The notes under the pieces are model-generated. The model was not told the origin of the DNA, searched no databases, and saw nothing but the letters and a program-made list of their open reading frames with translations. The position numbers were made by a program, and so were the translations under genes. From IMG/VR virus record IMGVR_UViG_3300005537_000001, positions 186,001 through 250,000 of that record: a DNA stretch of 64,000 bases; one strand, 5' to 3'. Shown here piece after piece: positions 42,570 to 59,549 of this stretch (within the stretch, counting starts at the first letter, position 1; each line of letters begins with the position of its first letter).

Positions 42570-43529
42570 ATGAATGACAAGAAGCTAGGTGCCATCTACG
42601 GCGCCCTTATCGGCGACGCCACTGGCTGTCCCTACGAATTCAACAGCCCTGAAAAGCTACCCCATCCCGACGAGATCGACATGTTTCCTCCGTCATGGTG
42701 GGAGTGCGCGTATCCCAACGTAAAGCTTGGGACCTACACCGACGATGGAGCTCAAACCCTCTGCCTGCTCGAGTCCCTCATCGAGGGAGGAGACCTCATC
42801 ACGGTGCTTCGAACGAAGCTGCAGAAGTGGCTGCACGAAGGCTACATGGCGGTTGACAGCTACGTGTTCGACGTGGGTAGCCAAACTCGCGCCGCGCTGC
42901 TAACGAAAGATCACACGAAGGTCTTTGCCGAAGAAGCTTCAAACGGTAACGGCGCGCTGATGCGCTGCATTCCTGTCGCGGTAATGGCTCAGTCAGAAGA
43001 TTACGCGATCACCATCGCGATGGAACAAGCCAAGGCTACCCACCCCCACATGTGGTCCCAGCTGACGTGCGCGGCATATGCCCTCATCGGATATTGGATG
43101 ATACGCGGTCACAAGATCACGATATCCGATTGCGTTGGGGCTCCAGTGGAGCAGGTGGTCAGCGACGCTGAATCGCTCATCATTCCAGCCTTCAGCCTGC
43201 TGCAGCGCAAGTTCCCAGAACATCGTCAGCACCTCGCATACATCTATAACTACCGCTATACCGAACCAACCGGCACCGGCTTCGTCGTTGATGCCTTCTG
43301 GTCGGCGCTCTTCGCGCTTCGAGTCGGTGATACGTATGAGAAGGTGATAAAGAGAGCCATCGAGCTTGGGCACGATACCGATACTACCGCGTGCATCGCC
43401 GGCGGGTTGGCAGGCATCAAGTTTGGAATGGCAGGAATACCGCGAAGGTGGATTGATGGACTGCGCGGTAGGGAGCTAATCGATTCGCTAGCGGCACGTG
43501 CGTCCCTCGGAGTAGAGGTCAACGAGTAG
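42570..43529 (+). CDS. ADP-ribosylglycohydrolase (DraG/ARH family)
   Basis: GALIGDATG, GTYTDDG, SNGNGALMR, TH, GHDTDTTACIAGGLAG. Confidence 0.92.
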   Translation: MNDKKLGAIYGALIGDATGCPYEFNSPEKLPHPDEIDMFPPSWWECAYPNVKLGTYTDDGAQTLCLLESLIEGGDLITVLRTKLQKWLHEGYMAVDSYVFDVGSQTRAALLTKDHTKVFAEEASNGNGALMRCIPVAVMAQSEDYAITIAMEQAKATHPHMWSQLTCAAYALIGYWMIRGHKITISDCVGAPVEQVVSDAESLIIPAFSLLQRKFPEHRQHLAYIYNYRYTEPTGTGFVVDAFWSALFALRVGDTYEKVIKRAIELGHDTDTTACIAGGLAGIKFGMAGIPRRWIDGLRGRELIDSLAARASLGVEVNE

Positions 43530-44068: not shown

Positions 44069-45779
44069 ATGAGCAAGACGCTGCTTGAACGATTGGAGAC
44101 TGTTGGTCCACTCTGTGCCGAAGCGGCCAAACACGTGCGAACGTTGGAATCGTATCTTGCTAGAACAGGTGCTGATTTCTTTATCGAAACTAAACCGACC
44201 GACGAGGAACTAGCTGAAGCTATCAGATGCGCCGCCGCCCATGGAGAAAAGCTGATAGCCGAGCTGAATCGACGAAAGGGATACACGACCCACTCGGCAG
44301 GTTCACTCGACAAGAACTGCATCTGCTACGGTAACTGGAGAAAGATAGTAGCCGATACTGAACACCTGCTGGACAAGGAGTTCGTTCGCGACTACGATGG
44401 TAAGATATACAGCTTCACCGGCGTGATGCACGGCTCGGATGATTTCTACTACGTAATGTGGAGCAAAGAGCGTACCATCTTCAGTTCTTGCGTTGGATCG
44501 CTCGAGACGAACGGTTTCACGCCGCTGGTGGTGGGCGGGTGAGCGTAGCCTACCTCATCACCGAATATTGGTACGACGCTCTCGAGAATCGCAACTTCGA
44601 GGGCTACAGCTCCATCGGCATCATCTATGACAAGGCAGAGGCTGAAGCCTTCGTCAAGGCGGGTGGAGAGGTACCAGGAGACGGCATCCTTATCTACCCG
44701 TTGCTACCTAACGGTTGCTCGGATTTCAGCAAGCAACCGACATTAGGTCGTCAGATGAACGCGCGTTATCACGCGCACGAACTGCCGATCATCAATTAAC
44801 CGCGCGGTGAATCATGAGCAACAAGCTTACGAAGGAAGAACGCATCGAGTGCCTGCAGCTCCTCATCGACAACATCGATAAGCATGACCGCAACATGGTT
44901 CTCTACGTCGAGAAGGTCGCGTATGAGCTAGCGATAGTTGAAAACAAGATGGTTGGCATGAGCGAGTTAGAGATGCGCAAGTTTCTCGGGCTCTATTACG
45001 AGGGACGTGAGAAGGACTACGACGCTGGCATCTATTATGAATCTGAGCAGTTCGATCACTACACCATCTACGAAAATGGGCAAGTCAAGGATGAGAGCTT
45101 TAACCAAGTTATGGATGGCTCGTCGATTCGGGTTTCACTGGTAGACGGCAAGGTGTACAAGGTTGGGCTTGGTGCTGGTCGATTGATATACGCGAGAGAC
45201 AAGGTACCCAAGGAGCTGCTACCGTGACCGAAGCTCAGTCATACGTCACTCCCTGGGTAACCGGTCATCGAATCGACTGCTCCATCCAGTCGCTGAGCCG
45301 CTACGCTAAAGCGCGCTGCAGCTGCTACGAGTTGAACAGCACGTGTCAGACATGTGGCCGCCGCCTTAATCCAGCTGACGCGACCGAAGGTAATCCAACT
45401 TGCGAGGGTCATGCGCGTGAAGCCTAACCGAATTCGCATCATGAACACAACCACGCTTGAGCACAACGGTGATCAGTGCATGGTCATCCGCATCGACATG
45501 GATGGCAGCTGCTCCGTCGGTTCAATCGAGCCTGGAGAAAGCTTCGAGATGAACCTGCCATATGGCAGCACTCTAACGGTTCGTGAGAGCGTCTCAGCAA
45601 TCCACACGAAGGGTCAACGGGTAACTGAGAATGGAATAACGAGAGCGCTGTATCCTACAAGGGAGCGACAGCCAAACGCGCCGCTCACCGACCCACACCC
45701 CTTCACTCCGCTGTTTGTTAACTGTCTAATCTGCAAGTTGTGCGGCAACGGACCAAACGTGGCGTTCCATAATGTTTAG
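44069..45779 (+). other. run of hypothetical CDS (44069-44542, 44539-44799, 44814-45227, 45224-45427, 45411-45779)
   Basis: Coupled plus-strand ORFs. Confidence 0.6.
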
Positions 45780-46728
45780 ATCAGACGCCCACAAGATTCT
45801 CGGCACCACCGACCAGATGTCCGATGAGGAGATCAAGAAGCGCTACCAGAAGCTGCGCTCGCTCTACCATCCCGACAAGAACCCTGGCAATGAAGCGGAA
45901 TCGAAGAAGAAGTTTGAGGCGGTGCAGGAAGCGAAGGACGTGCTGGACGGTAAGGTTAAGCAGCCACCTCCTAACTCCGGCTTTAGGCAGCAGCCCGGCG
46001 GCTTCAGCACGCACTACGTCAATCCAGAGGATCTCGCCGAGTTCCTCAAGAACTTCCAGCAGGCCTTCCACCCTGGGCCGGACAACCGACCGCGCCCAGA
46101 CAAGATAGACGACTACCAAGACAGCTGGGGTTCATCTGGCCCAGGAGCCCGCTCCCACGGTCCACAGGTACAGCAGCTGAACGCGGTCATCGTTATCTCC
46201 CTTGAGGAGGCCTTCAACGGCTGCACCAAGGAGATCAACATCCCAGTTCCAGGTGCCCTCGCGGCGCAGGAACCCCACAAGGTAGTCATACCGCGGGGCG
46301 CGTCAGAGTCGGACGTCGTCGCGGTAATCGAGAAGCCGACCCTCACAATCCGCTGCTTCATCCGTATCGCCCCGTCGGAGTACAAGGTGCAGTTCGCAAG
46401 CCCATTCAACGTCAATGGAGCTGGCAACGTCATCCGCGAGCAGAAGGTATCGCCCTTCCTGATGATGACAGGTGGCTTCATGGAGGTCAAGACCCTCGAC
46501 GGTACCATCAACGTGCGGGTGCCCGAAGGTCTTGAGGCAAACATGATGCTCAAGGTGCAGGGCAAGGGCTACTGGAAAGGATTCAGATCTACCGAGCGCG
46601 GCGACATGTTTCTACGAATGGTACCCGACATCAAGCCGATCAAGGACATACCGCTCGCCGAATACGCGCGGTTCACCCAGGTGGTAGACGAGTACCGCAA
46701 GGGACAGAAGGTGGATGAAAAGGTATGA
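45772..46728 (+). CDS. dnaJ: DnaJ-class co-chaperone (J domain, G/F-like linker, C-terminal domain, no Zn finger)
   Basis: IKKRYQKL...YHPDKNPG, ISLEEAFNG, VKTLDG, GKG...GDM. Confidence 0.9.
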   Translation: MFRSDAHKILGTTDQMSDEEIKKRYQKLRSLYHPDKNPGNEAESKKKFEAVQEAKDVLDGKVKQPPPNSGFRQQPGGFSTHYVNPEDLAEFLKNFQQAFHPGPDNRPRPDKIDDYQDSWGSSGPGARSHGPQVQQLNAVIVISLEEAFNGCTKEINIPVPGALAAQEPHKVVIPRGASESDVVAVIEKPTLTIRCFIRIAPSEYKVQFASPFNVNGAGNVIREQKVSPFLMMTGGFMEVKTLDGTINVRVPEGLEANMMLKVQGKGYWKGFRSTERGDMFLRMVPDIKPIKDIPLAEYARFTQVVDEYRKGQKVDEKV

Positions 46729-49114
46729 TTAACGCTACAGTCCTATTCGCTATCTTCTTCATCGCCATACCGGCCGTGGCCATCTTCGCCTCGAAGCGCG
46801 CTACCCGAAGGCGCGAGCGCGAAGAAGACGAAAGGCTCCGCGCCGAGAGAGCTCACGGCATTCTTGACGAGCTCGCGGTTGATTTCAACCCAGAGCTGGC
46901 CTTCAAGAGGGTGGCTGACCGTAGAGGTCTAACGGTAGAGCAGCTTCAGGAAGAGCTTCACGCCAGGGCTCAGTACGCGTCAGATCATCCCAACGAGTGC
47001 GTCTTCTGCAAGGTAACATCAGATCCCGTCCACTCGTTCGAATCATGTCCAGAGCTGAGGAGGCAACGTGACAACCGAGTTCAATGAGGAGTGGTGCCTG
47101 ACGATGGCGCGCCTTGAGGACAACGACAGCTGGAACCGAGCAGAAGCTATCAAGCGGGTTGCCGCCAAACACAACATTTCAGTCGAGGAGCTTGAAGCCG
47201 ACATCCGCCCGCGCCTGGCGTACACGACCGAGCGCGCCTACCTGGAGCTGCTCGATGGACCTGACGACACCTACCCACCCTGGAATCCCAACCTGCCAGC
47301 CAACCGCCAGGGACCCTTCGCGCTTCCTAAGAAGGAAGGCAGAGACTATATTTTTGGTGACTCACTCGCCGCGGTAAACCTGTCGAAGATGATCTACGAG
47401 AACCATCCCGAACAGTTCCGCCGGGTCGCCAGGGTGATGAACAACATCAACGCGCTGATCAAGAAGGGAGCCGCGGTTGAAGACGGCGGGCTCAGGTCAT
47501 GGCTGTACAAGGCGATCAGGAAGCACATCGCTGAATCCTTCGAGACCGTGGAGGTCAAGGCGGTCGCAACCCACGCGCGCAACGTGCTGATCAGCAACCT
47601 CCGCTCAGCCTTCAACCGGACGACAGCATGACCGGTCCACCCAGCTACAGTGATCCTGACGACCGCTTTGGACGGACCTGTCGGTGTGGCAACGCGCTGT
47701 ACCTGGAGATCGGCATCATTGAAAACCGCAACGGCATCCCGCACCTGAACAAGCAAAAGCATCCCTGCTTTCCCGGCAGCATCGAGATCGTTGAGTGCGC
47801 GGCCAAGTGCGGCTATTTTGCTCCAAGATACCGGAGGTACGATACGTGAAGCTTCTCTACAACCTGGTGATCTGCTTTCTAACGGCGGCCGCCATCTTCA
47901 TAACCTACAAGCTGGTAACTACATGATCCACAATCACGCGCAGCAGTTCCACCTCGGTCCAGCCGCGGTCATACTGCTCGTCATCGCGGCAGCCTTTCTA
48001 ATCCTACTGATCAAGGGATTTACGGACGATGAGTAGCGTACAGCGATCCGCCCCCAACCACCGTTCCCGCGGTCCGAATAGCTCAACTACCAACAACCTC
48101 TGGCACCGCCTGCACAAGAGGATAGCCGACAGGATGAGCAAGCAGCTGGAGAAGCTAAAATGAACAACGACTGGAACGACATCAAGTGGAACTGGTACCA
48201 CAAGCCACGAATGACCTTCGAGCGCTGGTGCAAGACAGATTCAACCTATGACCTGATAATATCAATCGCGACGGCGGTGCTGCTATTCGGCGCGATCATC
48301 GCAGGTCACTACCTGACGGCTGGTACCATAATCAGCTGCACCGCGGCTCTCGCCGGCATAACCTGTTACTTCAGGAGACATTACTGATGAGCTGGTACTA
48401 CTGTCCTGATGTGAACCGCAGCGTCTACGGGTGCTGCGCCTCGTGCAACTGCTCAAGAGGTAACGGTACCGCACCAGCTCCGCGAAAGAACCAGCGCCGC
48501 CCTACTACAAACATACCTACCTGCGGTACCGTTTATGCTAAAAGCAGTTCGACCGGCACCAACTGTCTAAAATTACCAGATCATCCAGGACCATGTGGAC
48601 CAACTCCACCGAGCTCAGGCATACCATTTAGAAGCGAAAGCGGCGACCTGTACCTGGTACCCGACCAACAGCAGATACTCGACTACAAGGCGGCGATCGA
48701 ACGCGGTGACGAACCGGCGATGCTACGCTTTGAAGAAGGTTGGACTGGTTGGGAAGCAATAACAGATGACTCAACGCCATGGTAACTAAAGAGCTAACCG
48801 AGGAAGAGATACGGCGGCAGATACAAGCTAAGGCTGTGGCAAGGCTGCTCAGCCCATATCAGGTTGAGCAGCTGGAGATAGTTCGCCGAATAGCTGAGCG
48901 AGGACTGATGGTAGCCCAGAAAGAAGGCAGCGGCCACTTCTGCGATCTGTTCACGCACCTGCTTGACAACCTGGTGCTGCTGCGCAAGGGAGATGCCTAT
49001 ACCGACGGCACACCATGGGCACTACCTGCTGTCGACCTGCAAACTAAGGAACCACCGTCCATTGCGGTTGGTTCCGCTACGCCCTTGTTGTGGGGTTCAG
49101 GACGCCTCCCTTGA
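46725..49114 (+). other. run of small hypothetical CDS (46725-47087, 47068-47631, 47628-47849, 47846-48036, 48160-48387, 48387-48785, 48779-49114)
   Basis: Coupled plus-strand ORFs; several have a TM segment or Cys pairs. Confidence 0.55.
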
Positions 49115-49128
49115 CCGGATTAATTGAC

Positions 49129-49644
49129 ATGGGTTATTCCGGGTTGCGGAAGATCATATCCGGCGGTCAAGTCGGTGTAGACCGGGGTGCCCTCGCTGCC
49201 GCCTTAGCTTTCGGTGTAGCAACGGGCGGCTGCGCGCCTCGTGGATGGCGAACGGTAACTGGCAGCGCACCAGAATTAGGTAGTTTGTATGGCTTGATAG
49301 AGCACGTTAGCCCAGAGTATCCCCCTCGAACCGAGGCGAACGTTCTCGCGGGCGACGGTACGCTGGTGATAGCTTCAGATCGCAACAGCGCGGGAACGGC
49401 GCTGACGATTCGCTACTGCTTGAAGCACTCGAAGCCGTACCAGCTGGTAGAGCCGCGGCGAACCGAAAGCTGGATAGCTCCGGTAAAGGAGCTCGCCGAG
49501 TGGATTATAAACCGGGAGATTGAAGTACTTAATGTAGCTGGTAACCACCGTGATGGAGCGTACCACGCGGACGTGACGATGGTGATCGTTAACCAGCTGT
49601 TCGTGGAGCTAGAGAAGCGTGATAGATTGGTTAAGAAGGATTAG
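49129..49644 (+). CDS. SLOG-superfamily protein (MoCo-carrier/DprA-like)
   Basis: IISGGQVGVDRGAL...TGG.AP.G...Y..RT..NV...DGTL...GT.LT...LNVAG. Confidence 0.8.
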   Translation: MGYSGLRKIISGGQVGVDRGALAAALAFGVATGGCAPRGWRTVTGSAPELGSLYGLIEHVSPEYPPRTEANVLAGDGTLVIASDRNSAGTALTIRYCLKHSKPYQLVEPRRTESWIAPVKELAEWIINREIEVLNVAGNHRDGAYHADVTMVIVNQLFVELEKRDRLVKKD

Positions 49645-49730: not shown

Positions 49731-50045
49731 TTACTTGCGAAACAGTCCAGCGCGGTACGTTTCGGTCCGCTCTTCGGCGAGCCTTAAGGCTGCCTCCTCC
49801 AACACCGTAACGATCGGGTTGTAGTCGACCTTGTCGGTGTCTGGTACCGGCAGCGAGCTGGTACCAACCGAGGTGATGCCGTCCAGCAGCGAGTCGTTAG
49901 CGCAGCACGGTTCGGCGCAGTCAGCTTCCCACTCGATGCAGCGGCCGACCGTTACGTTGTCACCGTACCAGCTGGTCGGTAGCTCGACGCGTCCGTGCAG
50001 GTTGATGGTGAACAGGCGGTCGAACTCGGTTGGATGTCGGGTCAT
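49731..50045 (-). CDS. hypothetical protein
   Basis: First ORF of the minus-strand block. Confidence 0.5.
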   Translation of the reverse strand: MTRHPTEFDRLFTINLHGRVELPTSWYGDNVTVGRCIEWEADCAEPCCANDSLLDGITSVGTSSLPVPDTDKVDYNPIVTVLEEAALRLAEERTETYRAGLFRK

Positions 50046-50291
50046 GGTAGCAGCTCCACTATCTTCTTGGTTAGCGAATCGATCTCAGCTTGAGCAACCT
50101 GAGTATTATCCTTTACCCACTTATCTATCCTGGCGCGCAGGGCGGTCTGCTGCTCATCGCGCTTCTCACGCAGCGTTTCGATCGTATCTTCCTTCATAGG
50201 ACCACTATGTGGTGAGGTCTAGTGCAGACGTGCGTTAGACCAAAGTGGATGAGACCCTTGCAGGTGGGGCAGCGGACTTCTACGTACTGGC

Positions 50292-50516
50292 TCATTTAAC
50301 TATCCTCAGCTTCTTCTTGAACTTTGAAACGGATGGGCGGTGCTTCTTCGCGGCAGGTCTAACTGACGGTGGCTCGGTAGCCACGCCATCTCGCAGGATG
50401 AAGTCATGGTCCTTTATCTCGAGGGTAAGGGAGGTACCCTTGCCAAGCACCAGCTTGAAGTCGTTGACTGAGCTTATCTGCAGCTCACCTTCTACCGCGG
50501 TAAGGGTTACCTTCAT
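50292..50516 (-). CDS. hypothetical protein with a basic tail
   Basis: MKVTLTAVEGELQI...KKKLRIVK. Confidence 0.55.
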   Translation of the reverse strand: MKVTLTAVEGELQISSVNDFKLVLGKGTSLTLEIKDHDFILRDGVATEPPSVRPAAKKHRPSVSKFKKKLRIVK

Positions 50517-50599
50517 GCGCTGCTCACTTAAGATACCCCAGGTTGAAAGCCAACCCGCGCGAGAGCGTCTTGCACTGTGGTACCTTCGGTCTCCCACTG

Positions 50600-50740
50600 T
50601 GTAGTCGGACGCTGTGCGTCACGACACACTTCGCGGTACGCAGAAGCTGAGATGTGAAGGAGGGTGTAGGTGTCTGTCATGCTCGTATTTATCTAGAAGG
50701 GGTTCAGCAACTGTAGTCGGACGCTGTGCGTCACGACACA
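50600..50740. repeat. two identical 29-bp palindromic direct repeats (50600-50628 and 50712-50740)
   Basis: TGTAGTCGGACGCTGTGCGTCACGACACA x2 with an 83-nt spacer. Confidence 0.9.
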
Positions 50741-50764
50741 GCTTAGTAACGGCGCCTGCGCAAA

Positions 50765-50847
50765 CCCCTTATGAGGTAACCAGGTGTGTAGATATCCCCT
50801 TATGAGGATAGATAAGCCTCTGGAATCCCCTTATAGTGATATATCAC
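50765..50847. repeat. three CCCCTTAT(G)AG boxes at 31-bp period plus a 12-bp palindrome
   Basis: Boxes start at 50765, 50796 and 50827; GTGATATATCAC at 50836-50847. Confidence 0.8.
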
Positions 50848-50990
50848 CTCTGGGGAAAGACCTCTGGCGCTACGGGGGACCCAGGTATTTTTCGCGCGCA
50901 GATTCAGGAGCGGCAGGAATAAATTGCCGATCGCGACACCTGCTCCGGGATGACCCGGATTTTTCTGGTGCGTTAGATCCAAGTCACCTA

Positions 50991-51239
50991 CTACAGTCCG
51001 ATCACCAGAGCTTTGGGCAGCTCCCGCATGTTCGCGTACTCTTCATCGTCCATGCAGCAGTCCTTCGCGCTCCACTCGGTGAAGTATGGCGTGATGTCTC
51101 GGCCGTCCATGTCGAAATTAGCTTCAGCCATTGCCTCAGATAGAAAGTGGTAATGATTACCCTCTTCGTCGGAAGATATCAGGACTACAGCCTCAGGATC
51201 ATGGCTCTCGAGAATTTTTATCAGTTCGCGTACGTTCAT
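50991..51239 (-). CDS. acidic hypothetical protein
   Basis: AAGGAGG RBS. Confidence 0.75.
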   Translation of the reverse strand: MNVRELIKILESHDPEAVVLISSDEEGNHYHFLSEAMAEANFDMDGRDITPYFTEWSAKDCCMDDEEYANMRELPKALVIGL

Positions 51240-51340
51240 GACATCTCCTCCTTACTTGTGGATTTCCTTAAGGGAACTGGACGTACAACCTGGACGTGAC
51301 ACCTTCTCCCGGCGGTCCCGGGAATTTTGGCGCGGTTGGA

Positions 51341-51881
51341 TCAGAGCGTCCAGTGAACCTTTTCATCTTCTACTACGTGCTCGATGCCAGCTAGGGTGAA
51401 CACGCTAGCCATATCCTGGGATAGGTAGCAACCTTGATCGGTGCCGGTCAGCGCCCACAGCAGTCCGCGGAGCATACCATCCAGATGATCGGCGCTGCCT
51501 CCACCGCTCTCAAAGGTCTGCGCCGCCTTGATGATCGCTTTCTGCAGCTCCAGCTTTCTTAGCATCGAGTTATCTCCACAGCTTTTTCTTGACGGCTAGC
51601 TCATGGTGCCTCGCTGCACTTTCACCGCACGGCATCCTGCCGCTGGCTAATCCCTGTCCTCCTGAGTACCTCGCGCTCGGCAGCTGCATCCGCCGCTTCC
51701 CGTAAACGACGTCGGTTGGTACGTGTGGACCGCTGCAGTACGGCGGAAATGGGCCGACGGCGCGGATGAACCACCTGCAGTCCTTGCAGAGCTTCACTTC
51801 GTTCCAGCTCCGTTTAGCAGGTATTGTTCCAGCTGGGCGGCGCGTTGGATCAGTTCCTCGGTGGCTGGATTGTATCTCCAC
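51341..51881 (-). other. two hypothetical CDS (51341-51565, and 51570 to about 51800 with CxxC motifs)
   Basis: Minus-strand ORFs. Confidence 0.55.
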
Positions 51882-51953
51882 GGCGCTTTGATCGCGGCTA
51901 CCAGCGCGAACGCTCGTACTGAAACTGGTGAGGAAGTTTGTGGATAGTGAATG

Positions 51954-52382
51954 TTAAAGTCCTGCATTTAATTTCCCTCGGTCGTTGAGTAAGCTTCTCG
52001 CGATGATCTCCAGCTCATGATTGACGAAGCTGACAGCGTAAGCCGCGCCGATGATTCGAAGCACCAGCTCCTGTTCATCATCTGCAATCGCCTTCTTTAG
52101 CCCCTTTAGGATCCATGGAACCAGGTCGACGAGTGGAGTTATCGCTAACCAGGGTACGTCTTGACCGTACTGGTTCAGGTGCCACCCCACCGTTGAATAA
52201 TATCCACTGCGTCCTACAACGCCACCTTGGGATATGTCTATCAGCTCGCTAAGTGCGATTGTAGATAGCTGAGTTTCCAGCTTTCTGATTTCAAACAACA
52301 GCTCTAACTTTCCCAGCTTGAACGGGTTGTCGAACGGGTTAATCGTTTGACGCGACCTGGTGGCGATAAGGTATTGGTTCAT
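51954..52382 (-). CDS. hypothetical protein, paralog of 52469
   Basis: TPLVDLVPWILKGL...NHELEIIARSL; promoter TGTACT-N17-TAAAAT at 52391-52419. Confidence 0.7.
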   Translation of the reverse strand: MNQYLIATRSRQTINPFDNPFKLGKLELLFEIRKLETQLSTIALSELIDISQGGVVGRSGYYSTVGWHLNQYGQDVPWLAITPLVDLVPWILKGLKKAIADDEQELVLRIIGAAYAVSFVNHELEIIARSLLNDRGKLNAGL

Positions 52383-52468
52383 CTGCGCCTATTTTAACCC
52401 ATCTGGAAACGTAAGTACAACCTGGACCTGACACCTTCTCCGGATGCTCCCCGGATTTTTGGGGCTGG

Positions 52469-52885
52469 TCAAAAGGCGCGCGGGAACGTAAAAGCGCGCC
52501 GCGCGAATTCCGCGCGTCTGTCTTCAACTACCTCGGACCTCAGGCTGTTCTCGATGATGTCAAGCTCCTGATCCTGGTGACCGCTCTCCTTAACGATCTC
52601 GATTATCAGCAGGATCTCGGCCGCGAGACCGGTAGCGACGGCGTCCCGGAGCCCAGCGAGCAGCCACGGTACCAGCTGGGACAGCGGCGTTAGCTGGACC
52701 GGATGCTGCGTGATCCCAACCTTCTTTATCCCTAGAAATTCCTTCAGCGTCTGCGGCGGTTGAAGCGCGTACTCGAGAGAGCGCAGCGTCTGCCAGTCCA
52801 TGACGAGATAATCGGTCGTCGGTCTGTCGACCAGCTCGGCCTGCCAGCCGTGAGCCAACCCAATCAGGAAGTCTGTTTCACTCAT
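52469..52885 (-). CDS. hypothetical protein, paralog of 51954
   Basis: TPLSQLVPWLLAGL...GHQDQELDIIENSL. Confidence 0.7.
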   Translation of the reverse strand: MSETDFLIGLAHGWQAELVDRPTTDYLVMDWQTLRSLEYALQPPQTLKEFLGIKKVGITQHPVQLTPLSQLVPWLLAGLRDAVATGLAAEILLIIEIVKESGHQDQELDIIENSLRSEVVEDRRAEFARRAFTFPRAF

Positions 52886-52927
52886 GCGCTAATTGTAACA
52901 CCAGGCGAGCTGGTAGTAAATAGACGC

Positions 52928-53638
52928 ATGCTGATACAAGATCTACAATCAATTCTAACCGAAGCTCAGGCTCGGCTGTACGCCGGCTGGGTTGGAGCTC
53001 GATCCCACAACTCTTCGGCTATTCACATTTTTATTCCAGATCATAATCATCCGGGTAATAGCCCTAGCAGCCCAATATATGTTTATCCAGGCTTACCATT
53101 TTCAGCTAGTAACGGTGCTCCAGGTACAACAGCTCCAGCTGGAACGAAGGTGTCAATCGGTGGTAAAACAAGCATCAAGGAATTTATCAATTCTGACTAT
53201 GGGATTCGGATGTACGGTCCGTTCATCAAGTTGATTAAATCCCAAAAGATTACAGATCAACAGCTACTTGATTTTGGCGCCAACATCTTAGCGCAAGTTA
53301 TCGCGAGCGGCGCCGACGAGGATAAATATTTTTCGTTTAAAGCCAAGCTACCGACCCAAGATGATATCATTCGGGGAATTCTCAAGATTTACAAGGATGA
53401 GCCCAAGGAGGTTAAGAGATTTATCTCCAACGCCAAGAAGCTTGGGTACAAGATTCCAGACGACGTGCTTGGAGCGATCTCAAAGTCGATCACCCACACT
53501 CGCAAGACTGAGGAGGCGGCGCGTCATGATAGCGCCGTCGCGGCGGCAAAGTCAGCTTTAGATAGAGCGCACCAGCGCCACGAGGATGCGGTTGCACGGC
53601 GTAACGCCTTCTTGAAGAAACACGGATTAGAAAGCTAA
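52928..53638 (+). CDS. late hypothetical protein with shared helical module
   Basis: TAAATA at 52917-52922, 5 nt before the ATG; MLIQDLQSILTEA; KLGYKIPDDVLGAISKS. Confidence 0.75.
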   Translation: MLIQDLQSILTEAQARLYAGWVGARSHNSSAIHIFIPDHNHPGNSPSSPIYVYPGLPFSASNGAPGTTAPAGTKVSIGGKTSIKEFINSDYGIRMYGPFIKLIKSQKITDQQLLDFGANILAQVIASGADEDKYFSFKAKLPTQDDIIRGILKIYKDEPKEVKRFISNAKKLGYKIPDDVLGAISKSITHTRKTEEAARHDSAVAAAKSALDRAHQRHEDAVARRNAFLKKHGLES

Positions 53639-55239
53639 GGTTTCTTTTTCTTCCGAGCCGCGGCGCGCTCAACTCCGCCGGCGTAGACTTCCTGAGCTCG
53701 CGCGCGGCTGTCGAACGGCCCGTACATGTACCACTCGACTACGATGTACCACTTTGCCCAAATCCTGAACGGCTTAACGTTCATCGGTTTTTCTCCGGCG
53801 CTCGGCGGCTCTCCGAAGTTCAGTCTGATAACCAGCTTCAGCCGCTCCCTTGTTAGTCCACGGTCCGTACTGCACACCGTTAACTATGACCCACCAGCCA
53901 GTTCGAAGCGCGAAGGGACCGTGGTTGTTCGCAACCTCTCTCAGCTTCTTTAGGCGATCATACTCATCCTGGCTGATGTGCTCGATGCTGTCCTTCGGCT
54001 TCAGGCAGATGTGACAGCGGCTTTTATCCCGCGCCGTCGCCAAGAAGACGTGGCGGAGGTCCTCGTCTGGCCATGCATCCTTTTCCATGGCTAAATTCCA
54101 ATCAGCTCTAGTTCGACAATTTCGGCGCGATCGTCGAACCACATCTTTTGCGGCGAGGCGAGGTGTTCTTCTGCCGCCTCAAGCGTGACGTAGGCGGCTC
54201 TCGCGCTGATGTTTCCGATAGACTTATTTTCTCCGACGATAACGAAAATCTTCATCGCGTTTCTCCTTAGTTAGACCATCAACCCGTACTGGTGTAGAAA
54301 GAAGGCTCCGTCTGGTTCTTCATTGATCATCTCCATCACCTCGGCAGCGAGCTGGCGCTGGTGTGGCTCCAGCTTCCACCAGAGCACCGCCAGCTGGCGC
54401 AGGTACTTCTGCCTGGTCCGCTGGGTCTTGGCGGCCCGGGCCAGTCGAAAGCAAGTCATGAAGGCAGGGAGGTACGTCATGGCGGGTCACTCGTCGGTTA
54501 CCTCGTCGCACGCCTGCGCGATCGTGTTCAGCCAGCTGCTAACCGCGTCGAGCGCGATTCCTCCCTCCTGAACCGGATGATCCGCCATCCCCTGCAGGAA
54601 CAAGCTGATCATGTAGCCAACGTCCTTGGGACTGACGTCGATGCCGAGCGCGTTTGCCGCGGCGGTTACGTCATCGACGAGTGAGGCGATAGTTTTGATT
54701 TCTCGCGTCATAGCAGCATCATCCTGTAGCCGTGGCTACGTCTTCAACCTCGTCAACGATGTCGGCGACAAGCAGCAACCACGTCGTAACGTAGTTGATT
54801 TCAGGTCCGTCGCTCTCATCATCTGGTCCATCGGCAACTCCCTGCAGGAACAAGCTGATGATGAACGCCGCCTCTCGTGGGCTGATAATTACGCCAACCT
54901 GGGTTGAGGCTAGAGCCGCGTTGTGAACAAGCGCTTCAATCTTGTGCATGGCGTTCACCCGGTGTTGTTCGATACCCACATCCGGGCGATCAGCAGATCA
55001 AGCTGGTGCAGGTCGCTGTCGAGTGACGCAAGCTCAGCTTGAGCGCTTCCATGGCAGCTGCCACCCTTGTGGATCTTGGTGATGTCGCCGACAACTCGAT
55101 CGCGCTCGATTCGCGCGTGGCGCAGCAGGCAGAGCAGCTCAACTCGGTTGTCGATGACGAACGGTGTTTGAAGCTTCAGCCCGATGATCCGGCTGCCTGC
55201 CGTCATCGTTGAAGTTGTATTGATCGGCGGGATTGACAT
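53635..55239 (-). other. run of small early-type CDS (53635-53784, 53774-54088, 54271-54480, 54487-54711, 54719-54958, 54955-55239)
   Basis: Coupled minus-strand ORFs including two paralog pairs. Confidence 0.6.
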
Positions 55240-55261
55240 GACACATTCTCCCTTTGGGCTC

Positions 55262-55285
55262 GGGCAGAGTGTCAGTCCTCTGCCC
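55262..55285 (-). terminator. stem-loop after the histone-like gene
   Basis: GGGCAGAG-N8-CTCTGCCC with no clear U-tract. Confidence 0.45.
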
Positions 55286-55298
55286 TACCCAGGCACCA

Positions 55299-55697
55299 TC
55301 ACAGCGCCGGCTTGATGGCCTCCGCGATGTCGCGTGGGGTGGTATCCTTTCGGTTGGGTACCTGGACTCCCTTGGCCTTCGCCAGCGATAGGAGTTTCGG
55401 TAGGTTGGCTGGCCGTACAGCCACACCCTTGCCCTCGGCTACCGACTTGAGGAATACCGCTCCGTAGCGGAATCCGCGGGGCCCGGCGCGGTGGACCGAC
55501 TTCTTGACCGTCTTGATCCGCTTCGTTACCGCTTCGGCGGTATCCTGATCGACTCGAATTCCCGACGGTCGATTTTGGATGAAGGAGGTCAGCTTCGACA
55601 CCGACTGAATCTTGTGCTGCCGGATCAAGGCTCGAGCCTCGTCCGCGTCCTTAAGACCAAGTTCAGCCGCCTTTTCGATCAGTGCATTCATCTTCAT
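55299..55697 (-). CDS. basic putative DNA-binding protein, paralog of 18309
   Basis: AGPRGFRYGAVFLKSVAEGKGVAVRPANL matches the 18309 protein; AAAGGAG RBS. Confidence 0.75.
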   Translation of the reverse strand: MKMNALIEKAAELGLKDADEARALIRQHKIQSVSKLTSFIQNRPSGIRVDQDTAEAVTKRIKTVKKSVHRAGPRGFRYGAVFLKSVAEGKGVAVRPANLPKLLSLAKAKGVQVPNRKDTTPRDIAEAIKPAL

Positions 55698-55875
55698 GGT
55701 CGTCTCCTTTGCTGTGTTGCGTTATGTTCCTGATGGAGCTATTCCATCAGGTAGGGATATCATACAACCTGTCATCAATCAGTTATATAGTCCTTTAGGC
55801 CAGGTTCATGTAGTCCCAGGACTACAAGGTTTACAAATTATGTTAAATGAAGATCTTCCTATTATGTTAAATCGG

Positions 55876-56208
55876 TTAGTCACCGCCGGCAAGCGACTGC
55901 AGGGCGAGCAGCGTCAGCAGGTGGGCCCGGTCAAGTCGTCTAATCTTTCCAGCTTTGAGATCATCGTGCATCGCGTCCCGCGCCTTCCGAAGAAATATAA
56001 TCGCGTCGTGCAGCGGAGTGTTTCCACTTCGCCTCCCCTTGTCCAGCTTCTGCTTCTCAAGCCCGAGCTGCTGCCGCCACTTGTAGAGGGCGGAGTTCGG
56101 AATTTTAAGATTGTCAGCGATTACCTGTGGGCTCTCCTTCTTCATCCGCGCGACCGCCAACCGCTTGAACTTTTCGGTGTACGTCTTTCGCTTCTTCATT
56201 TTCTTCAT
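55876..56208 (-). CDS. helix-turn-helix protein resembling IS3 OrfA (HTH_Tnp_1)
   Basis: RKTYTEKFKRLAV...QVIADNLKI..SALYKWRQQ. Confidence 0.7.
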   Translation of the reverse strand: MKKMKKRKTYTEKFKRLAVARMKKESPQVIADNLKIPNSALYKWRQQLGLEKQKLDKGRRSGNTPLHDAIIFLRKARDAMHDDLKAGKIRRLDRAHLLTLLALQSLAGGD

Positions 56209-57314
56209 CGTCCTCGTCTCCGTGCTGGTGTTTCAACGTGGTCCATGCGGCTAGAGTACCTCGCTAGGTCGTCCCTCCGCTTCACTATCTCGGCGGGTCG
56301 CCGCTTTGCCCAGCTGTTCAAATTTGCTCGACACCTTTGACACGTGTCGAGCTTGCTCCGTGGGCTCAGCTCATCTCCGCAGTTCTTGATGACGCATCGT
56401 CTTACTGTCATGCGAATTATCCTGTTTGTTTGGGTTTTACTTCTTCAATCGTCAGCGCCGCGTCCAACTCCTGTCTCGGCAGCGTTCGACTCCAGAGCTC
56501 CGCCAGAAGTTCAGCGTGCCTCGCGGTCCGCCGCTTTATCTCTTCTGTTTCAAGCCGGAGATCTAGAATGAGCTCCTCCATCGTCATATCCTCAAGCTTA
56601 ACCATCTGCTCCCCTCCCCTTCGCGCCTTAGCGCTTGAACAAACCCCTGAAGCGCTGAATCATGGATTCAGACGCGTCTAGGTGTTCCTTAACCTCCATC
56701 TCGGATGGTTTAGGCTCTACAAGCTCAGCCGGCGGTTGGACTATGTCGGTCACCTTGATCTTCGTAGACGTATCTCCGCTCTTCTGATCTCCGCGCAGCT
56801 TGCGATCGATCCACTCAAAGTAGTTCATCCCGCGACCTCCCTATCGCTATCTTCATCGTTGCGCCGGAGCAGCTCCTCCATTTCCTCCGCCGTAACTATC
56901 ATCGCGCTTATCGAACTTTTGAAGCTGTCCAGCTGCTGCAGGCACTCCTGTACCGACTGTCGAAGGGCCTGAACCTCATACCACTTAGTCGCGGCGGGAT
57001 GTTCGGCAACCATCCGATTTATTAGCTTCTGGCAAGCTATGGTCATCTTTAGCACTTTCTCTTGTAGCATCTGTCGCTCCCTAATTTTGTGGGCGCTCTG
57101 GATCCTTCGAGGCGTTTCTAACGCCGGCAAAAAAACCAGAGATGTAAACCGTCAGCAGCAGCTCCTTCAGCAGCAGCTCCCTTTCAGGAACATCTTGACA
57201 GAAGAAACCAACCACCTCTGCCTTTTCCTTCATTATCGAATCGACGTGAAGAGATACTTCCTGGGTTTTCTCCTCTGGCGCCAACCGAATGGTATCTTCA
57301 GTCTGTATGATCAT
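56205..57314 (-). other. run of small CDS (56205-56411, 56417-56605, 56628-56828, 56825-57070, 57081-57314)
   Basis: RBS-led minus-strand ORFs. Confidence 0.6.
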
Positions 57315-57400
57315 GTGCTCACCCCAGCACCGAGGCAAGGTTGAAGCTGAAAAATTTCTTCATTGAAACTCCTAGTTGTTAAAGAACGTGAAACGTTCTA

Positions 57401-57429
57401 ATTATAACATGAACCTGGGCCAGGTTACA
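57401..57429 (-). promoter_or_regulatory. early promoter driving the leftward block
   Basis: TGTAAC-N17-TATAAT with TG extension on the minus strand. Confidence 0.75.
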
Positions 57430-57478
57430 TAGGAGGGAAAGTGCAGGTTGGAGGGTGGGATAATTGCCGGTTAGCGTG

Positions 57479-57484
57479 TAAATA
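57479..57484 (+). promoter_or_regulatory. late promoter TAAATA
   Basis: 29 nt before ATG 57514. Confidence 0.6.
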
Positions 57485-57513
57485 GTTGAACGCACGTTAG
57501 CTGGAAGTGAAAA

Positions 57514-57783
57514 ATGCTACTCAAAGATTTGCTTGTGTACGAAGAAACAAAGTCAGCTGCCGTCCACCCGCACACGGAAACTCTCTCCAAGCTAATTCAC
57601 GACATTCGAAATCCGCTCGGCGCGATCTTAACGACGAACCGGATGCTAGCTTCTGGTGTGTCTGACGAAAGTCTTTTCAAGTTTATTGAGCTACAGGATG
57701 TAGCGTGCCGGGAGATAAAAGAGCTGCTGCGGGTCGCGGCTGAAACCTTACCAGCTAAAGCTAATTGGCTGAAGAAAACCTAA
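57514..57783 (+). CDS. stand-alone histidine kinase dimerisation/phosphoacceptor (HisKA/DHp)-like protein
   Basis: LSKLIHDIRNPLGAI H-box, second helix, no ATPase domain. Confidence 0.75.
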   Translation: MLLKDLLVYEETKSAAVHPHTETLSKLIHDIRNPLGAILTTNRMLASGVSDESLFKFIELQDVACREIKELLRVAAETLPAKANWLKKT

Positions 57784-57796
57784 GCTGGAGCGTCAC

Positions 57797-58363
57797 GTGA
57801 ATTTACATCAACTTCTAGAAGCAGCAGCTCCAACATTTGATAATTTGACAGGTAAAGACATTGGGCTTCATCCACACATATTTGGGGCTCCATTCGTGGC
57901 TGTCAGGTGGAAGATAGGTGGAAATAATGGGCAAGCCCTCGTGGATTTCCCGGCTGGTAAGCCGCCCATCGTATCAACGCGCGGCGAAGATACAGAGCGA
58001 GCATTCATAGCAGCAAATAAAAGCCTACTGATAGATTTTGCAAGTAACCTACTGCTGCAGGCGGTCGCGCTAGGTACTGATTTCACAGGTGCCCGCGATC
58101 GCCCATCGAAATATAAACCGGTATCAAGTCAGGCCTTGGCGCGCGGAATTTTATCGTGGTACAAAACAGTTAACCATAAAATGATGACCAATCTGCTTGC
58201 GACAGTTAAGGCGGTGGGTGGTCATCTACCAGCTGACGTTGTAGCCGCTGTGGGAAAGAGCATTGGCGTTACTCGTGTCGTGGAGCTTAAAAAGCGAATC
58301 GCGTCAACTAAAGCTAGTCTTGCTAAAATGGAAGCCGAACTAGCGGAGCTGGAAGCAAAATAG
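57797..58363 (+). CDS. late hypothetical protein with shared helical module and coiled-coil tail
   Basis: MNLHQLLEAA; KAVGGHLPADVVAAVGKS. Confidence 0.7.
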   Translation: MNLHQLLEAAAPTFDNLTGKDIGLHPHIFGAPFVAVRWKIGGNNGQALVDFPAGKPPIVSTRGEDTERAFIAANKSLLIDFASNLLLQAVALGTDFTGARDRPSKYKPVSSQALARGILSWYKTVNHKMMTNLLATVKAVGGHLPADVVAAVGKSIGVTRVVELKKRIASTKASLAKMEAELAELEAK

Positions 58364-58441
58364 CGTCGACGTTATAGCCTAGCTCTAATTTGTTCGAGCA
58401 GTGATTGTATCGTTTTGAGCAGCTCAATTATCTGCTGTGTT

Positions 58442-59549
58442 TCAGTCACGTGATTCTCCAAGCTTTGAGTTGTGCAGCTCTACGATGTGGTGAGCTATCT
58501 TTTGTCCAACGTTAAAGGCAACACCTTCTTGATTCTTGTACTCGACCCCAAAATCAGATCTACCTGGCTTTACCACAGCTGAGAAGATGCTGCCACCTCG
58601 AGCAACCCATTTCTCCTTGAGCAGATCGCTCATTTACCAATTCCAAGCTGATCACCGCAGCGGCAGTCGCTGAAAAATCCGCACTTGATGATGCAGATAC
58701 CGCGTGAGTCGTATTGCGGTAAGGTCGAAACCAACCACGTGGTGCTGCCGCATTCTGGACAGCTATCGGCGTCTTTCGTCCAAAGATGTCCGCACTTAAC
58801 GCACTGATTTTGCTTAATTGTCATTATGCATGCGCCACATCTTCACAAGCCCATCGATCTGGTCTTGTATTCGCTTGACGCAGAGGAGCTTCGCGTTTTT
58901 GTAGTGAGAGTTACCATTTACGAATCGCGGGATCCAAAAGTGGTGTTCATCCTCCCACACATACGCTAGCGACCACTCACCCTCTACTACGCTGTAATTT
59001 TCTTCAGTCGATTTAAGAGGATACGTGAACGTAAGTGGCTCGTTCAAAAATGCCATCATGATTTCGAATTGAACGAAGTGACCACCGCTACCCATGCGAT
59101 CAACAAAGTAGGCATCGCTTATCGCGAGAATGTGATCGAGGTCGATGTAGCGACCTATTAAATCTGAATGGTAGACTCTCATGCTTCTTTGTCCTTGTGC
59201 CAATTGCTCTCACGACACAATGGGCACTGAATGAATGGTGGATTCTGCAGTGGGAGTACTAGGTCGCTGTAGTTGTACGTGAAGATGCTCTTGCATCGCC
59301 CGCACTTCATCTTGTACAGCGTAGGAGGCCCGAGATTATCCTTAATGATGGTTACTGTCATTTTGCTGCTTTTCCTGTTCTACCATCAACGTCGCACCAG
59401 GGACAAATGTGCAGAGCGCCACGATCAGCTGTATCCTTACTCATCCCCCACTCACTTTGTAACTTTTCAGACCAAGCGTCCTTGAGAATTTGGATCAAGT
59501 GACCATATCCGATTCTATCCGCCAACTCGATGACTTGAGCTTCATTCAT
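58442..59549 (-). other. run of small CDS (58442-58633, 58630-58824 Zn ribbon, 58814-59182, 59179-59361 Zn ribbon, 59358-59549)
   Basis: ATGA-coupled minus-strand ORFs. Confidence 0.6.

What the first reader, a model, noticed from the sequence alone, without database searches (positions are those of the whole stretch)
50600..50740. Paired 29-bp palindromic direct repeats in the longest non-coding stretch
TGTAGTCGGACGCTGTGCGTCACGACACA occurs twice, 112 bp apart. Each copy folds as TGT/ACA, GTCG/CGAC and GACGC/GCGTC around a 3-nt loop. It resembles a CRISPR repeat, but there are only two copies and an 83-nt spacer. Candidates are recombination sites, nicking or packaging hairpins, or an ncRNA processed between the repeats (for example a mini-array or anti-CRISPR RNA decoy).
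Basis: partly seen in the sequence, partly recalled or inferred. Interest (0 to 1): 0.65.

Follow-up and report, generated by a model that had tools for sequence, protein, structure and literature searches.

The report
REP-like hairpin pair flanking phage promoter
The two 29-base repeats are identical copies of a small bulged DNA hairpin with a GTAG head, a kind of element best known from bacterial chromosomes, which here brackets a late promoter in a 368-kb uncultivated phage and recurs, with its stem kept paired, in the same operon of related phages; it is not a CRISPR array.

Summary
TGTAGTCGGACGCTGTGCGTCACGACACA occurs exactly twice (window 50600-50628 and 50712-50740, + strand) and nowhere else in the 368,054-bp jumbo-phage genome.

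The CRISPR, mini-array and decoy readings fail. The 83-nt "spacer" is native sequence. On the minus strand it holds the conserved box GCTGAACCCCTT, the phage's late-promoter motif GATAAATA, and the start codon and first 17 codons of a conserved small gene. Relatives that lack the repeats at these positions have the same sequence there.

Metagenomic relatives of the adjacent 74-aa gene carry hairpins of the same architecture in or just before the first gene of the same operon: TGT, bulged A, 4 bp, 5 bp, 3-nt loop, 5 bp, bulge, 4 bp, ACA. Their stem sequences differ but stay fully paired (48 of 48 cells, 5 pairs changed on both sides). Position varies between lineages, and in the window the orientation is inverted.

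The anatomy matches GTAG-tagged REP elements. High copy number and a RAYT transposase, which also define REPs, were not found in the phage, and no host REP family was found.

Best reading (about 0.4): a conserved, locally mobile, REP-like hairpin handled as a folded single strand. Main rival: a cis-acting mRNA hairpin. No expression or read data could be obtained.

The parts
50600..50628 (+). Hairpin HP-B, copy 1 (the GTAG-headed strand is the + strand): TGT A GTCG GACGC TGT GCGTC A CGAC ACA. It lies inside the remnant first gene, directly after its 17 conserved N-terminal codons.
   Evidence: (47.2 bits); position relative to the gene
50712..50740 (+). Hairpin HP-B, copy 2, identical 29 nt. 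It sits immediately upstream (in operon sense) of the conserved promoter box. It is absent at the homologous place in L027, L057 and L062.
   Evidence: (44.8 bits)
50574..50599 (+). Flanking unit HP-A (ACTGT GGTACC TTC GGTCTCCC ACTG), a degraded second small hairpin. Together with copy 1 it is inverted in place relative to L062 and L027.
   Evidence: window 50604-50574 equals the reverse complement of L062 796-826, 28/31, E 3e-5
50686..50693 (-). GATAAATA, the phage's late-promoter-like motif, between the two copies and pointing into the operon.
   Evidence: ATAAATA is the most enriched 7-mer upstream of genes, and 51 of 82 occurrences lie within 100 nt of a called start. (G/T)TAAATA is conserved at the same place in L027, L057, L060 and L062.
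50697..50708 (-). Conserved box GCTGAACCCCTT just upstream of the late-promoter motif.
   Evidence: 12/12 in L057 and L062; GAACCCCTT in L027
50528..50680 (-). Remnant of operon gene 1 (50 codons). Its ATG lies 5 nt after the promoter motif. The N-terminal MTDTYTLLHISASAYRE is conserved, and the roughly 41-codon core present in relatives is missing and replaced by copy 1.
50292..50516 (-). Operon gene 2 (74 aa, MKVTLTAVEGELQISS...), the conserved marker that led to all related loci.
50042..50197 (-). Operon gene 3 (51-aa coiled-coil protein), syntenic in all relatives.
49731..50045 (-). Operon gene 4 (104 aa), syntenic in L029 and L032. It converges on the cpYpsA gene.
50763..50844 (.). Three iterons ATCCCCTTATGAGGATAGAT at 31-bp spacing, part of the conserved regulatory region upstream of the promoter.
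   Evidence: conserved as 4-5 copies in relatives
50944..50969 (+). Terminator-like hairpin plus T run on the + strand (antisense to the operon). The hairpin and the adjacent GGAGCAGGTGTC are conserved in L027.

Best explanation
The repeat is a small structured element, not an array. It is a GTAG-headed, bulged hairpin of the REP (repetitive extragenic palindrome) type.

Shown:
- The same architecture recurs in the first-gene region of one conserved late operon in at least four other uncultivated phage lineages. That architecture is a 3-bp TGT/ACA clamp, a bulged A, 4 bp, 5 bp, a 3-nt loop and a second bulge.
- The stem letters differ between lineages but stay complementary.
- The element sits at different positions in different lineages. 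In this phage it is in the opposite orientation and is duplicated.
- The pairing that covaries needs a one-base offset between the arms. It therefore exists only in an extruded single strand, not in a symmetric duplex site.

Inferred:
- The element is recognised and handled as a folded single strand by a structure-specific protein supplied in trans. This would most plausibly be single-stranded DNA at replication or recombination. A host RAYT/HUH-type enzyme is the known model.
- Such handling lets it be copied, moved a few hundred bases and flipped locally.
- In this phage one copy, with its flanking small hairpin, was inverted in place at the junction of a deletion that removed the core of gene 1.
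- A second exact copy landed just upstream of the promoter box. The pair now forms a head-to-tail dimer around the late promoter and the first 17 codons.
- When transcribed, copy 1 forms a stable stem at about +52 to +80 of the late mRNA, and copy 2 forms one in read-through transcripts. The likely side effects are mRNA stabilisation or insulation, and a 29-bp homology that could delete the promoter.
For: - Exact pair, unique in the genome.
- Model hits in relatives: L027:771-803 (43 bits), L062:820-852 and L063:335-367 (34.8 bits, E 4e-6), and weaker variants L028:36-67 and L029:16-44.
- Covariation: 48/48 cells paired, 5 pairs changed on both sides, 0 of 500 shuffles reach it, and slid controls collapse to 17-58% paired. 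Symmetric pairing without the bulges gives only 69%.
- Insertion-like behaviour: both window copies are absent at the orthologous places in L027. L027 has a 75-nt in-frame insertion carrying the unit relative to L029/L030. The unit is inverted in place in the window, although the operon converges on the cpYpsA gene in L029 and L062/63 just as it does in the window.
- REP hallmarks as defined in PMC8266576 and PMC3733652: 20-50 nt palindrome, 5' GTAG, stem bulge, 3-nt loop, 12-13-bp stems with 1-bp bulges, CT just 5' of GTAG (ACTGTAG in copy 2 and L029), dimers 20-100 bp apart, and occasional intragenic copies.
Against: - There are only two copies in 368 kb, both at one locus. Relatives also carry the element at this same operon, which looks more like a locus-bound functional element than a dispersing repeat.
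- No Y1/RAYT or TnpB family in the phage.
- No multi-copy family with this architecture in 151 sampled Gammaproteobacteria or in the two genomes checked in full. No sequence match in genome, metagenome or viral collections beyond chance.
- In all four relatives the GTAG strand is the mRNA sense strand, which would also fit an RNA element.
- Head-to-tail REP dimers are the rare type.
- No read or expression data could be obtained.
Confidence: 0.4

Rival explanations
1. It is a cis-acting RNA hairpin of the late operon. The stem is transcribed as part of the gene-1 mRNA and acts as a protein-binding or nuclease-blocking structure that sets mRNA stability, processing or translation of the operon. 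The window's arrangement would be a decayed or re-wired version.
For: In L027, L028, L029 and L062/63 the GTAG strand is the operon's sense strand. The element stays with one operon across lineages whose gene 2 is only about 42-89% identical, with compensatory stem changes that suggest selection in place. Both orientations fold equally well, so a purely structural RNA role would survive the inversion. The hairpins appear in the minimum-energy fold of the minus-strand transcript.
Against: The conserved GTAG and bulged A lie on the antisense strand in the window, so a sequence-specific RNA reader would be lost here. Yet the window shows the most recent activity, an exact duplication. In three relatives the element lies inside the coding sequence, where ribosomes would unwind it. 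Position varies from just 5' of the ATG to the 3' part of the gene. There is no U run for termination on either strand. No RNA data.
Confidence: 0.27
2. The palindromes are neutral or mutational by-products. They would be quasi-palindromes created and reshaped by template switching or slippage in a recombination-prone region, without a dedicated reader.
For: The locus is visibly unstable: the core of gene 1 is deleted, the small hydrophobic ORF between genes 1 and 2 is lost, and L030 has a 32-nt duplication. Short inverted ACTGT/ACAGT repeats flank the unit and could drive the inversion.
Against: Template switching does not explain why TGT-A-G, the two bulge positions, the 3-nt loop and the stem lengths stay the same across lineages while five stem pairs change on both sides. 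It also does not explain an exact 29-nt copy with sharp ends 112 bp away.
Confidence: 0.12
3. The two copies are duplex operators for a dimeric repressor that loops out and shuts the late promoter lying between them, as with the gal OE/OI operators.
For: The copies bracket the promoter almost symmetrically (centres at 50726 and 50614, promoter motif at 50686-50693). The inner 13 bp, GACGCTGTGCGTC, is a perfect palindrome. The gal operators are about 114 bp apart (own knowledge).
Against: The covarying middle stem pairs only with a one-base offset. Symmetric duplex pairing gives 69% against 100%. Relatives have one copy, inside the gene rather than around the promoter. A spacing of 112 bp is about 10.7 helical turns, poorly phased for a short loop. 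No DNA-binding fold was recognised in the neighbouring small proteins.
Confidence: 0.07
4. The copies are sites for a site-specific recombinase that excises or inverts the 112-bp promoter cassette, acting as a genetic switch.
For: Direct repeats flank a promoter. The unit is found in inverted orientation relative to relatives.
Against: No resolvase/invertase or tyrosine recombinase family is present in the complete phage genome. A 112-bp circle is too small for standard synapsis. The promoter and gene start are in the native orientation. Relatives have single copies.
Confidence: 0.05
5. It is a CRISPR mini-array, solitary repeat units or an anti-CRISPR RNA decoy.
For: A 29-nt palindromic repeat occurs twice.
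Against: The 83-nt spacer is outside usual spacer lengths and is native promoter and gene sequence shared with relatives. The stem spans the whole repeat and leaves no handles. The repeat core has 0 hits in 185,579 species genomes and in IMG/VR. The 23 metagenome hits outside the phage's own contig are single hits in high-GC DNA without the TGTA head. No other local repeat arrays occur in the genome.
Confidence: 0.01

Closest known systems
GTAG-tagged REP elements of bacteria (REP/BIME; group-2 type with a bulged stem; mobilised by RAYT/TnpAREP)
   Same: Shared features are a 29-nt imperfect palindrome, the 5' (T)GTAG head, a stem interrupted by single-base bulges, a 3-nt loop and 12-13 bp of stem. 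CT lies just 5' of GTAG. Family members differ by complementary stem changes. Dimers sit 20-100 bp apart, and some copies lie inside genes (PMC3733652, PMC8266576).
   Different: The element is in a phage, with two copies in 368 kb, and is tied to one operon across lineages instead of dispersed. No RAYT was found in the phage and no matching host family was found. The dimer is head-to-tail, the rare type. TGT of the head pairs with a 3' ACA, whereas in many REP families the tag is unpaired.
PeSL cassettes (promoter-early stem-loop) of T4-like phages
   Same: Both are short repeated stem-loop-plus-promoter sequences in variable regions of T4-type genomes, and both act as points of rearrangement (PMC2839356, PMC4122927).
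   Different: PeSLs are composite terminator and early-promoter motifs present many times per genome. Here the promoter is of the late type and lies between the repeats, not in them. The hairpin has no U run, and there are only two copies.
Rickettsia palindromic elements (short palindromic repeats inserted in frame in protein genes; own knowledge, not checked here)
   Same: A small palindromic element sits in frame inside a protein-coding gene without breaking it (L027, L028, L062, and the remnant gene in the window).
   Different: RPEs are about 100-150 bp and occur in many genes. This element is 29 nt (about 55-75 nt with its companion hairpin) and stays in one gene.
IS200/IS605 ends and their miniature derivatives (PATEs)
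   Same: Both are subterminal imperfect hairpins with extrahelical bases, read as folded single-stranded DNA by an HUH tyrosine enzyme.
   Different: There is no TnpA or TnpB in the phage. The DNA between the two hairpins is native promoter and gene sequence, not cargo. The left and right hairpins are identical and directly repeated.

Membership tests
CRISPR array / mini-array / solitary repeat unit | Spacer of foreign origin and usual length (about 26-72 nt) between the repeats | tested here: not met
   The spacer is 83 nt and consists of the native box GCTGAACCCCTT, GATAAATA, the ATG and 17 codons of gene 1, alignable to L027, L057 and L062.
CRISPR array / mini-array / solitary repeat unit | The repeat matches a CRISPR repeat of a host or of other genomes | tested here: not met
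   The core pattern has 0 hits in genome contigs and viral contigs. Apart from the phage's own contig, the metagenome hits are single matches in high-GC DNA without the TGTA head. No dedicated CRISPR-repeat database was available.
REP (GTAG superfamily) | Palindrome of 20-50 nt preceded by a conserved GTAG | tested here: met
   The element is 29 nt. TGTAG is present at the 5' end in both window copies and in L027, L028, L029 and L062/63.
REP (GTAG superfamily) | Stem irregularity (bulge), as in group-2 REPs, with complementary stem variation among members | tested here: met
   The two bulge positions are conserved. All cells (100%) pair, with 5 two-sided changes. The no-bulge model reaches only 69%.
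REP (GTAG superfamily) | High copy number, dispersed and mostly extragenic in the genome | tested here: not met
   The complete 368-kb phage genome holds only 2 copies, both at one locus. Copy 1 and the copies in L027, L028 and L062 lie inside an ORF.
REP (GTAG superfamily) | Cognate RAYT/TnpAREP (Y1 HUH) gene | tested here: not met
   PF01797 is absent from the phage. The host is unknown, so supply in trans is not testable. A sample of 151 Gammaproteobacteria gave no multi-copy family, and scoring in that sample was limited to 47 candidates per genome.
REP (GTAG superfamily) | Cleavage at a CT next to the folded single strand | not testable with these tools
   CT is present 0-2 nt 5' of GTAG (ACTGTAG, ACTGTGTAG). 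Cleavage needs a bench assay.
PeSL (T4-type promoter-early stem-loop) | Composite early promoter plus terminator stem-loop, repeated many times in variable regions | tested here: not met
   There are two copies only, no U run after the stem on either strand, and the promoter between the copies is of the late type.
Intrinsic terminator | G+C-rich hairpin followed by a U run | tested here: not met
   The terminator scan does not call either copy. The flanks are CTTCGCGG and GCTTAGTA on the + strand, and CAGTGGGA and GTTGCTGA on the - strand.
Paired duplex operators (gal/lac type) | Two-fold symmetric duplex site bound by a dimer | tested here: inconclusive
   The outer TGT/ACA and the inner 13 bp are symmetric, but the covarying 4-bp middle stem is offset by one base. 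No binding protein was identified.

The most novel reading that the evidence does not exclude
The hairpin is a phage-owned structured element with a dedicated, still unknown reader, not a stray host REP. For example, it could be a site where a single-strand nick or fold is made next to a T4-type late promoter to load the replication clamp that activates late transcription. Alternatively, it could be a phage-specific mobile hairpin that moves without any RAYT. Either reading would explain why it stays with one late operon across divergent jumbo phages while its stem, position and orientation change.
Probability: 0.15. Interest if true: 0.75.

Novelty: new variant of a known kind. Interest (0 to 1): 0.5.

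Why it matters
REP-type hairpins are regarded as features of bacterial chromosomes that depend on a domesticated transposase. Here a REP-like hairpin is conserved with compensatory changes inside one late operon of uncultivated jumbo phages, and it is locally copied and flipped. This raises two possibilities: phages pick up and keep such elements from hosts, which would give a host clue, or phages have their own reader for folded hairpins. The locus also gives a compact regulatory region to test, consisting of iterons, a conserved box, a late promoter directly in front of a start codon, and hairpins on both sides. Finally, it shows that a pair of identical palindromic repeats in a phage should not be read as a CRISPR remnant without checking what lies between them.

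Tried and rejected
- Nucleotide searches of the locus against cultured phages, near and distant mode: no match.
- Protein-guided searches of IMG/VR with four neighbouring proteins and with the gene-2 profile: none. tblastn of gene 2 against cultured phages: none.
- Pattern scans:
  - Repeat core in IMG/VR: 0 hits.
  - Repeat core in metagenomes: apart from the phage's own contig, 23 single hits in high-GC DNA without the TGTA head.
  - Two patterns in 185,579 species genomes: 0 hits, and 24 chance hits without the hairpin.
  - Two further IMG/VR patterns (flank plus head; promoter box plus TAAATA): 131 loci, none with operon genes or the hairpin.
- Rfam: nothing relevant. There was a sub-threshold Guanidine-II row at 50911-50958.
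- Hypothesis that the element keeps a fixed strand relative to the genome and that the operon block was inverted here: rejected. In L029 and L062/63 the operon converges on cpYpsA just as it does in the window.
- Hypothesis of a host REP family: not found in 151 sampled Gammaproteobacteria or in two genomes scanned in full. Sensitivity was limited, so this means 'not found in those searched'.
- Pfam and PHROG scans of operon proteins: nothing significant.
- Structure models: the gene-2 model was poor (pLDDT 59) and had no fold match. The gene-1 model (pLDDT 82) gave only weak FosA/VOC-like rows. No binding partner could be proposed, so no complex prediction was run.
Read termini, deletion or inversion variants and transcription remain untested.

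Full report
**Observation.** The 29-mer TGTAGTCGGACGCTGTGCGTCACGACACA is at window 50600-50628 and 50712-50740 on the + strand. Both copies are exact, and shuffles expect none even with three mismatches allowed. The window is bases 186001-250000 of a 368,054-bp virus record with terminal repeats, contig Ga0070730_10000005. The two copies are the only ones in that genome, even with seven mismatches allowed. One extra flanking pair extends the stem in both copies, with a two-sided change: G..C in copy 1 and C..G in copy 2.

**Setting.** The phage is a T4-like jumbo phage. Its topoisomerase II large subunit is about 50% identical to those of Xanthomonas phages X1, BUDD and XacN1. The window also holds DnaJ, an ADP-ribosylglycohydrolase and a cpYpsA SLOG protein. 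The repeats lie in a block of small minus-strand genes (about 49731-60650). They sit between an 82-aa gene ending at 50991 and a 74-aa gene starting at 50516.

ATAAATA is the most enriched 7-mer upstream of genes in this genome. Of its 82 occurrences, 51 lie within 100 nt of a called start, typically 20-45 nt before it. By established knowledge this corresponds to the T4 late promoter TATAAATA. One such motif, GATAAATA at 50693-50686 on the minus strand, lies between the two repeats. An ATG follows 5 nt later (50680).

**Relatives.** Nucleotide and protein-guided searches of cultured phages and IMG/VR found nothing. The 74-aa protein has metagenomic relatives, and I fetched their short contigs. 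The loci are L027 (89% identity), L028, L029, L030-32, L057-59, L060-61 and L062-63. Synteny is conserved: a first gene of 71-146 aa with the N-terminus MTxTYALLxxSASxYxEI and the core IVMDGIGLV, then the 74-aa gene, a 51-aa coiled-coil gene and a fourth gene.

The upstream regulatory region is also conserved. It has palindromic iterons, the box GCTGAACCCCTT, (G/T)TAAATA, and the gene-1 ATG 3-5 nt later. In the window, gene 1 survives as a 50-codon ORF (50680-50528). It keeps the first 17 residues and a C-terminal stretch, but about 41 core codons are missing. Copy 1 of the repeat sits exactly at that junction. That excludes a CRISPR-type spacer.

**The hairpin family.** L027 has neither window copy at the homologous positions. 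Inside its gene 1, however, it carries TGT A GCGG ACAGC GCA GCTGT A CCGC ACA. This is the same architecture as the window's TGT A GTCG GACGC TGT GCGTC A CGAC ACA. A genome-wide scan of the 368-kb phage for this architecture with no bad pair finds only the two window copies.

A covariance model built from these sequences then found further members:
- L062:820-852 and L063:335-367: TGT A GCAG GGAGC GAA GCTCC T CTGC ACA, 34.8 bits, E 4e-6.
- L028:36-67: a weaker variant.
- L029:16-44: a weaker variant, directly 5' of the gene-1 ATG.

Across the three distinct full-architecture sequences, all 48 cells pair and five pairs change on both sides. No shuffle of 500 reaches this, and slid controls fall to 17-58% paired. 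A symmetric pairing without the bulges gives only 69%, because the covarying 4-bp middle stem needs a one-base offset. So the conserved object is an extruded single-strand hairpin with fixed bulges, not a symmetric duplex site. The invariant parts are TGT-A-G at the 5' end, ACA at the 3' end, the closing G:C pairs and the bulge positions.

**Mobility and rearrangement.** The element is at a different place in each lineage:
- L029: just 5' of the gene-1 ATG.
- L028 and L062: eight codons after the conserved core.
- L027: within a 75-nt in-frame insertion relative to L029 and L030.
- The window: two places.

In all relatives the GTAG strand is the operon's sense strand. In the window it is the antisense strand. 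The inversion is local. Window 50604-50574 is the reverse complement of L062 796-826 (28/31, E 3e-5), so copy 1 and its companion small hairpin (HP-A) were flipped in place. The operon as a whole converges on cpYpsA in L029 and L062/63 just as in the window. Copy 2 is an exact 29-nt copy with sharp ends. It was inserted between the last iteron and the promoter box, where L027, L057 and L062 have unrelated short sequence. The locus shows other damage as well, including loss of a small hydrophobic ORF that relatives have between genes 1 and 2.

**Comparison with known systems.** By the published definitions, REPs are 20-50-nt palindromes preceded by GTAG. One group has a bulged stem that is needed for activity, and cleavage occurs at a CT next to the folded single strand. 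Loops are mostly 2-3 nt, stems reach 12-13 bp with 1-bp bulges, dimers sit 20-100 bp apart, members differ by complementary stem changes, and some copies lie inside genes (PMC8266576, PMC3733652). The phage element meets all the anatomical criteria, including CT directly before GTAG in copy 2 and L029.

It fails the genomic criteria. There are two copies at one locus and no Y1/RAYT gene in the phage. It is also not a PeSL: there are few copies, there is no U run, and the promoter is of the late type and lies between the repeats rather than within them. The phage has no TnpB, resolvase or integrase family.

I looked for a host REP family with the model in 151 sampled Gammaproteobacteria and in two genomes in full, and by pattern in the large collections. 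I found only single, chance-level hits. That sample was small and only part of the candidates were scored, so the result is 'not found in those searched'.

**Verdict.** What is shown:
- The pair is real, unique in the genome, and folds as described.
- It flanks a late promoter and the start of a conserved gene.
- It belongs to a small family of GTAG-headed bulged hairpins that is conserved by structure in one operon of related uncultivated phages.
- Its position and orientation vary between lineages, and in this phage it is duplicated.

What is inferred: the element is read as a folded single strand by a structure-specific protein, and local copying and flipping by such a process produced the present head-to-tail dimer. 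I favour a REP-like DNA-level element at about 0.4. A cis-acting mRNA hairpin is the main rival at about 0.27, because the element stays with one operon and is on the sense strand in every relative. The remaining rivals are a by-product of template switching (0.12), duplex operators (0.07), recombinase sites (0.05) and CRISPR-like readings (0.01).

**Limits.** Structure models of the two conserved small proteins gave no clue to a binding partner. All relatives are short contigs found through gene 2, so only this locus is visible in them. Only the window's own genome shows that the element is absent elsewhere in a genome.

Noticed in passing
window 50763-50844: Three iterons ATCCCCTTATGAGGATAGAT sit at exactly 31-bp spacing and are unique in the genome. 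The middle one is itself palindromic. Relatives have 4-5 copies of CCYnWWWRGGGGAT at the same place (L027, L057, L062), and L060 has iterons of a different sequence. This looks like a binding array for a regulator that co-evolves with its sites.
   Followed up: partly
window 50697-50708 (-) and 50678-50693 (-): The box GCTGAACCCCTT is conserved 12/12 in L057 and L062. It is followed by (G/T)TAAATA and then an ATG only 3-5 nt later in the window, L027, L057 and L062. This suggests a leaderless or nearly leaderless late mRNA.
   Followed up: partly
whole genome (G000), e.g. window 2317, 12973, 22035, 42520: ATAAATA occurs 82 times, and 51 of these lie within 100 nt upstream of a called start. 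In about seven cases a start codon lies 4-5 nt after the motif (for example genome 51706, 106298, 279827, 326481). This hints that leaderless late genes recur in this phage.
   Followed up: partly
window 50838-50849: The perfect 12-bp palindrome GTGATATATCAC gives TGnTATAT on both strands. It resembles the TGATATAA(T) words enriched upstream of genes, and GGTGATATATC is conserved in L027. It may be a two-way extended -10 element or an operator.
   Followed up: no
window 50944-50969, 51306-51324, 52439-52455 (+): CCGGG-type hairpins followed by T runs lie on the + strand inside a block of minus-strand genes. The first is conserved in L027. They may stop antisense transcription or end a small + strand RNA that starts near 50850.
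   Followed up: no
window 50514-50528 (-); L027:828-921, L029:255-365, L031:127-214: Relatives encode a hydrophobic peptide of about 30 aa between gene 1 and gene 2. In the window only GTGAGCAGCGCATGA is left.
   Followed up: partly
L030:242-273: A 32-nt duplicate of the 5' end of gene 2 (94% identical to window 50517-50486) lies about 120 nt upstream of the real gene start. This is another sign of local duplication in this operon.
   Followed up: no
L029:42-254 (gene 1 of relatives); window 50528-50680: The gene-1 model (pLDDT 82) is a beta-alpha-beta-beta-beta unit plus a helix, with only weak FosA/VOC-like structural rows and a sub-threshold DUF6732 hit. Its function is unknown. The C-terminal motif IxRxFK is conserved in L027, L029, L030 and L057.
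   Followed up: partly
window 49090-49644, 45772-46728, 42570-43529, 26262-27962: Neighbouring accessory genes are a circularly permuted YpsA (SLOG) protein, a DnaJ-like chaperone, an ADP-ribosylglycohydrolase, and a 566-aa protein with NMT1/THI5-like and OmpA domains.
   Followed up: no
L067:1501-1532 (-), a bacterial genome G136: A single intergenic hairpin ACTGTAGTCGAAGGCTCTGCACTCGACACA shares the first 10 and last 7 bases with the window element but is not repeated in that genome. It is probably chance.
   Followed up: yes
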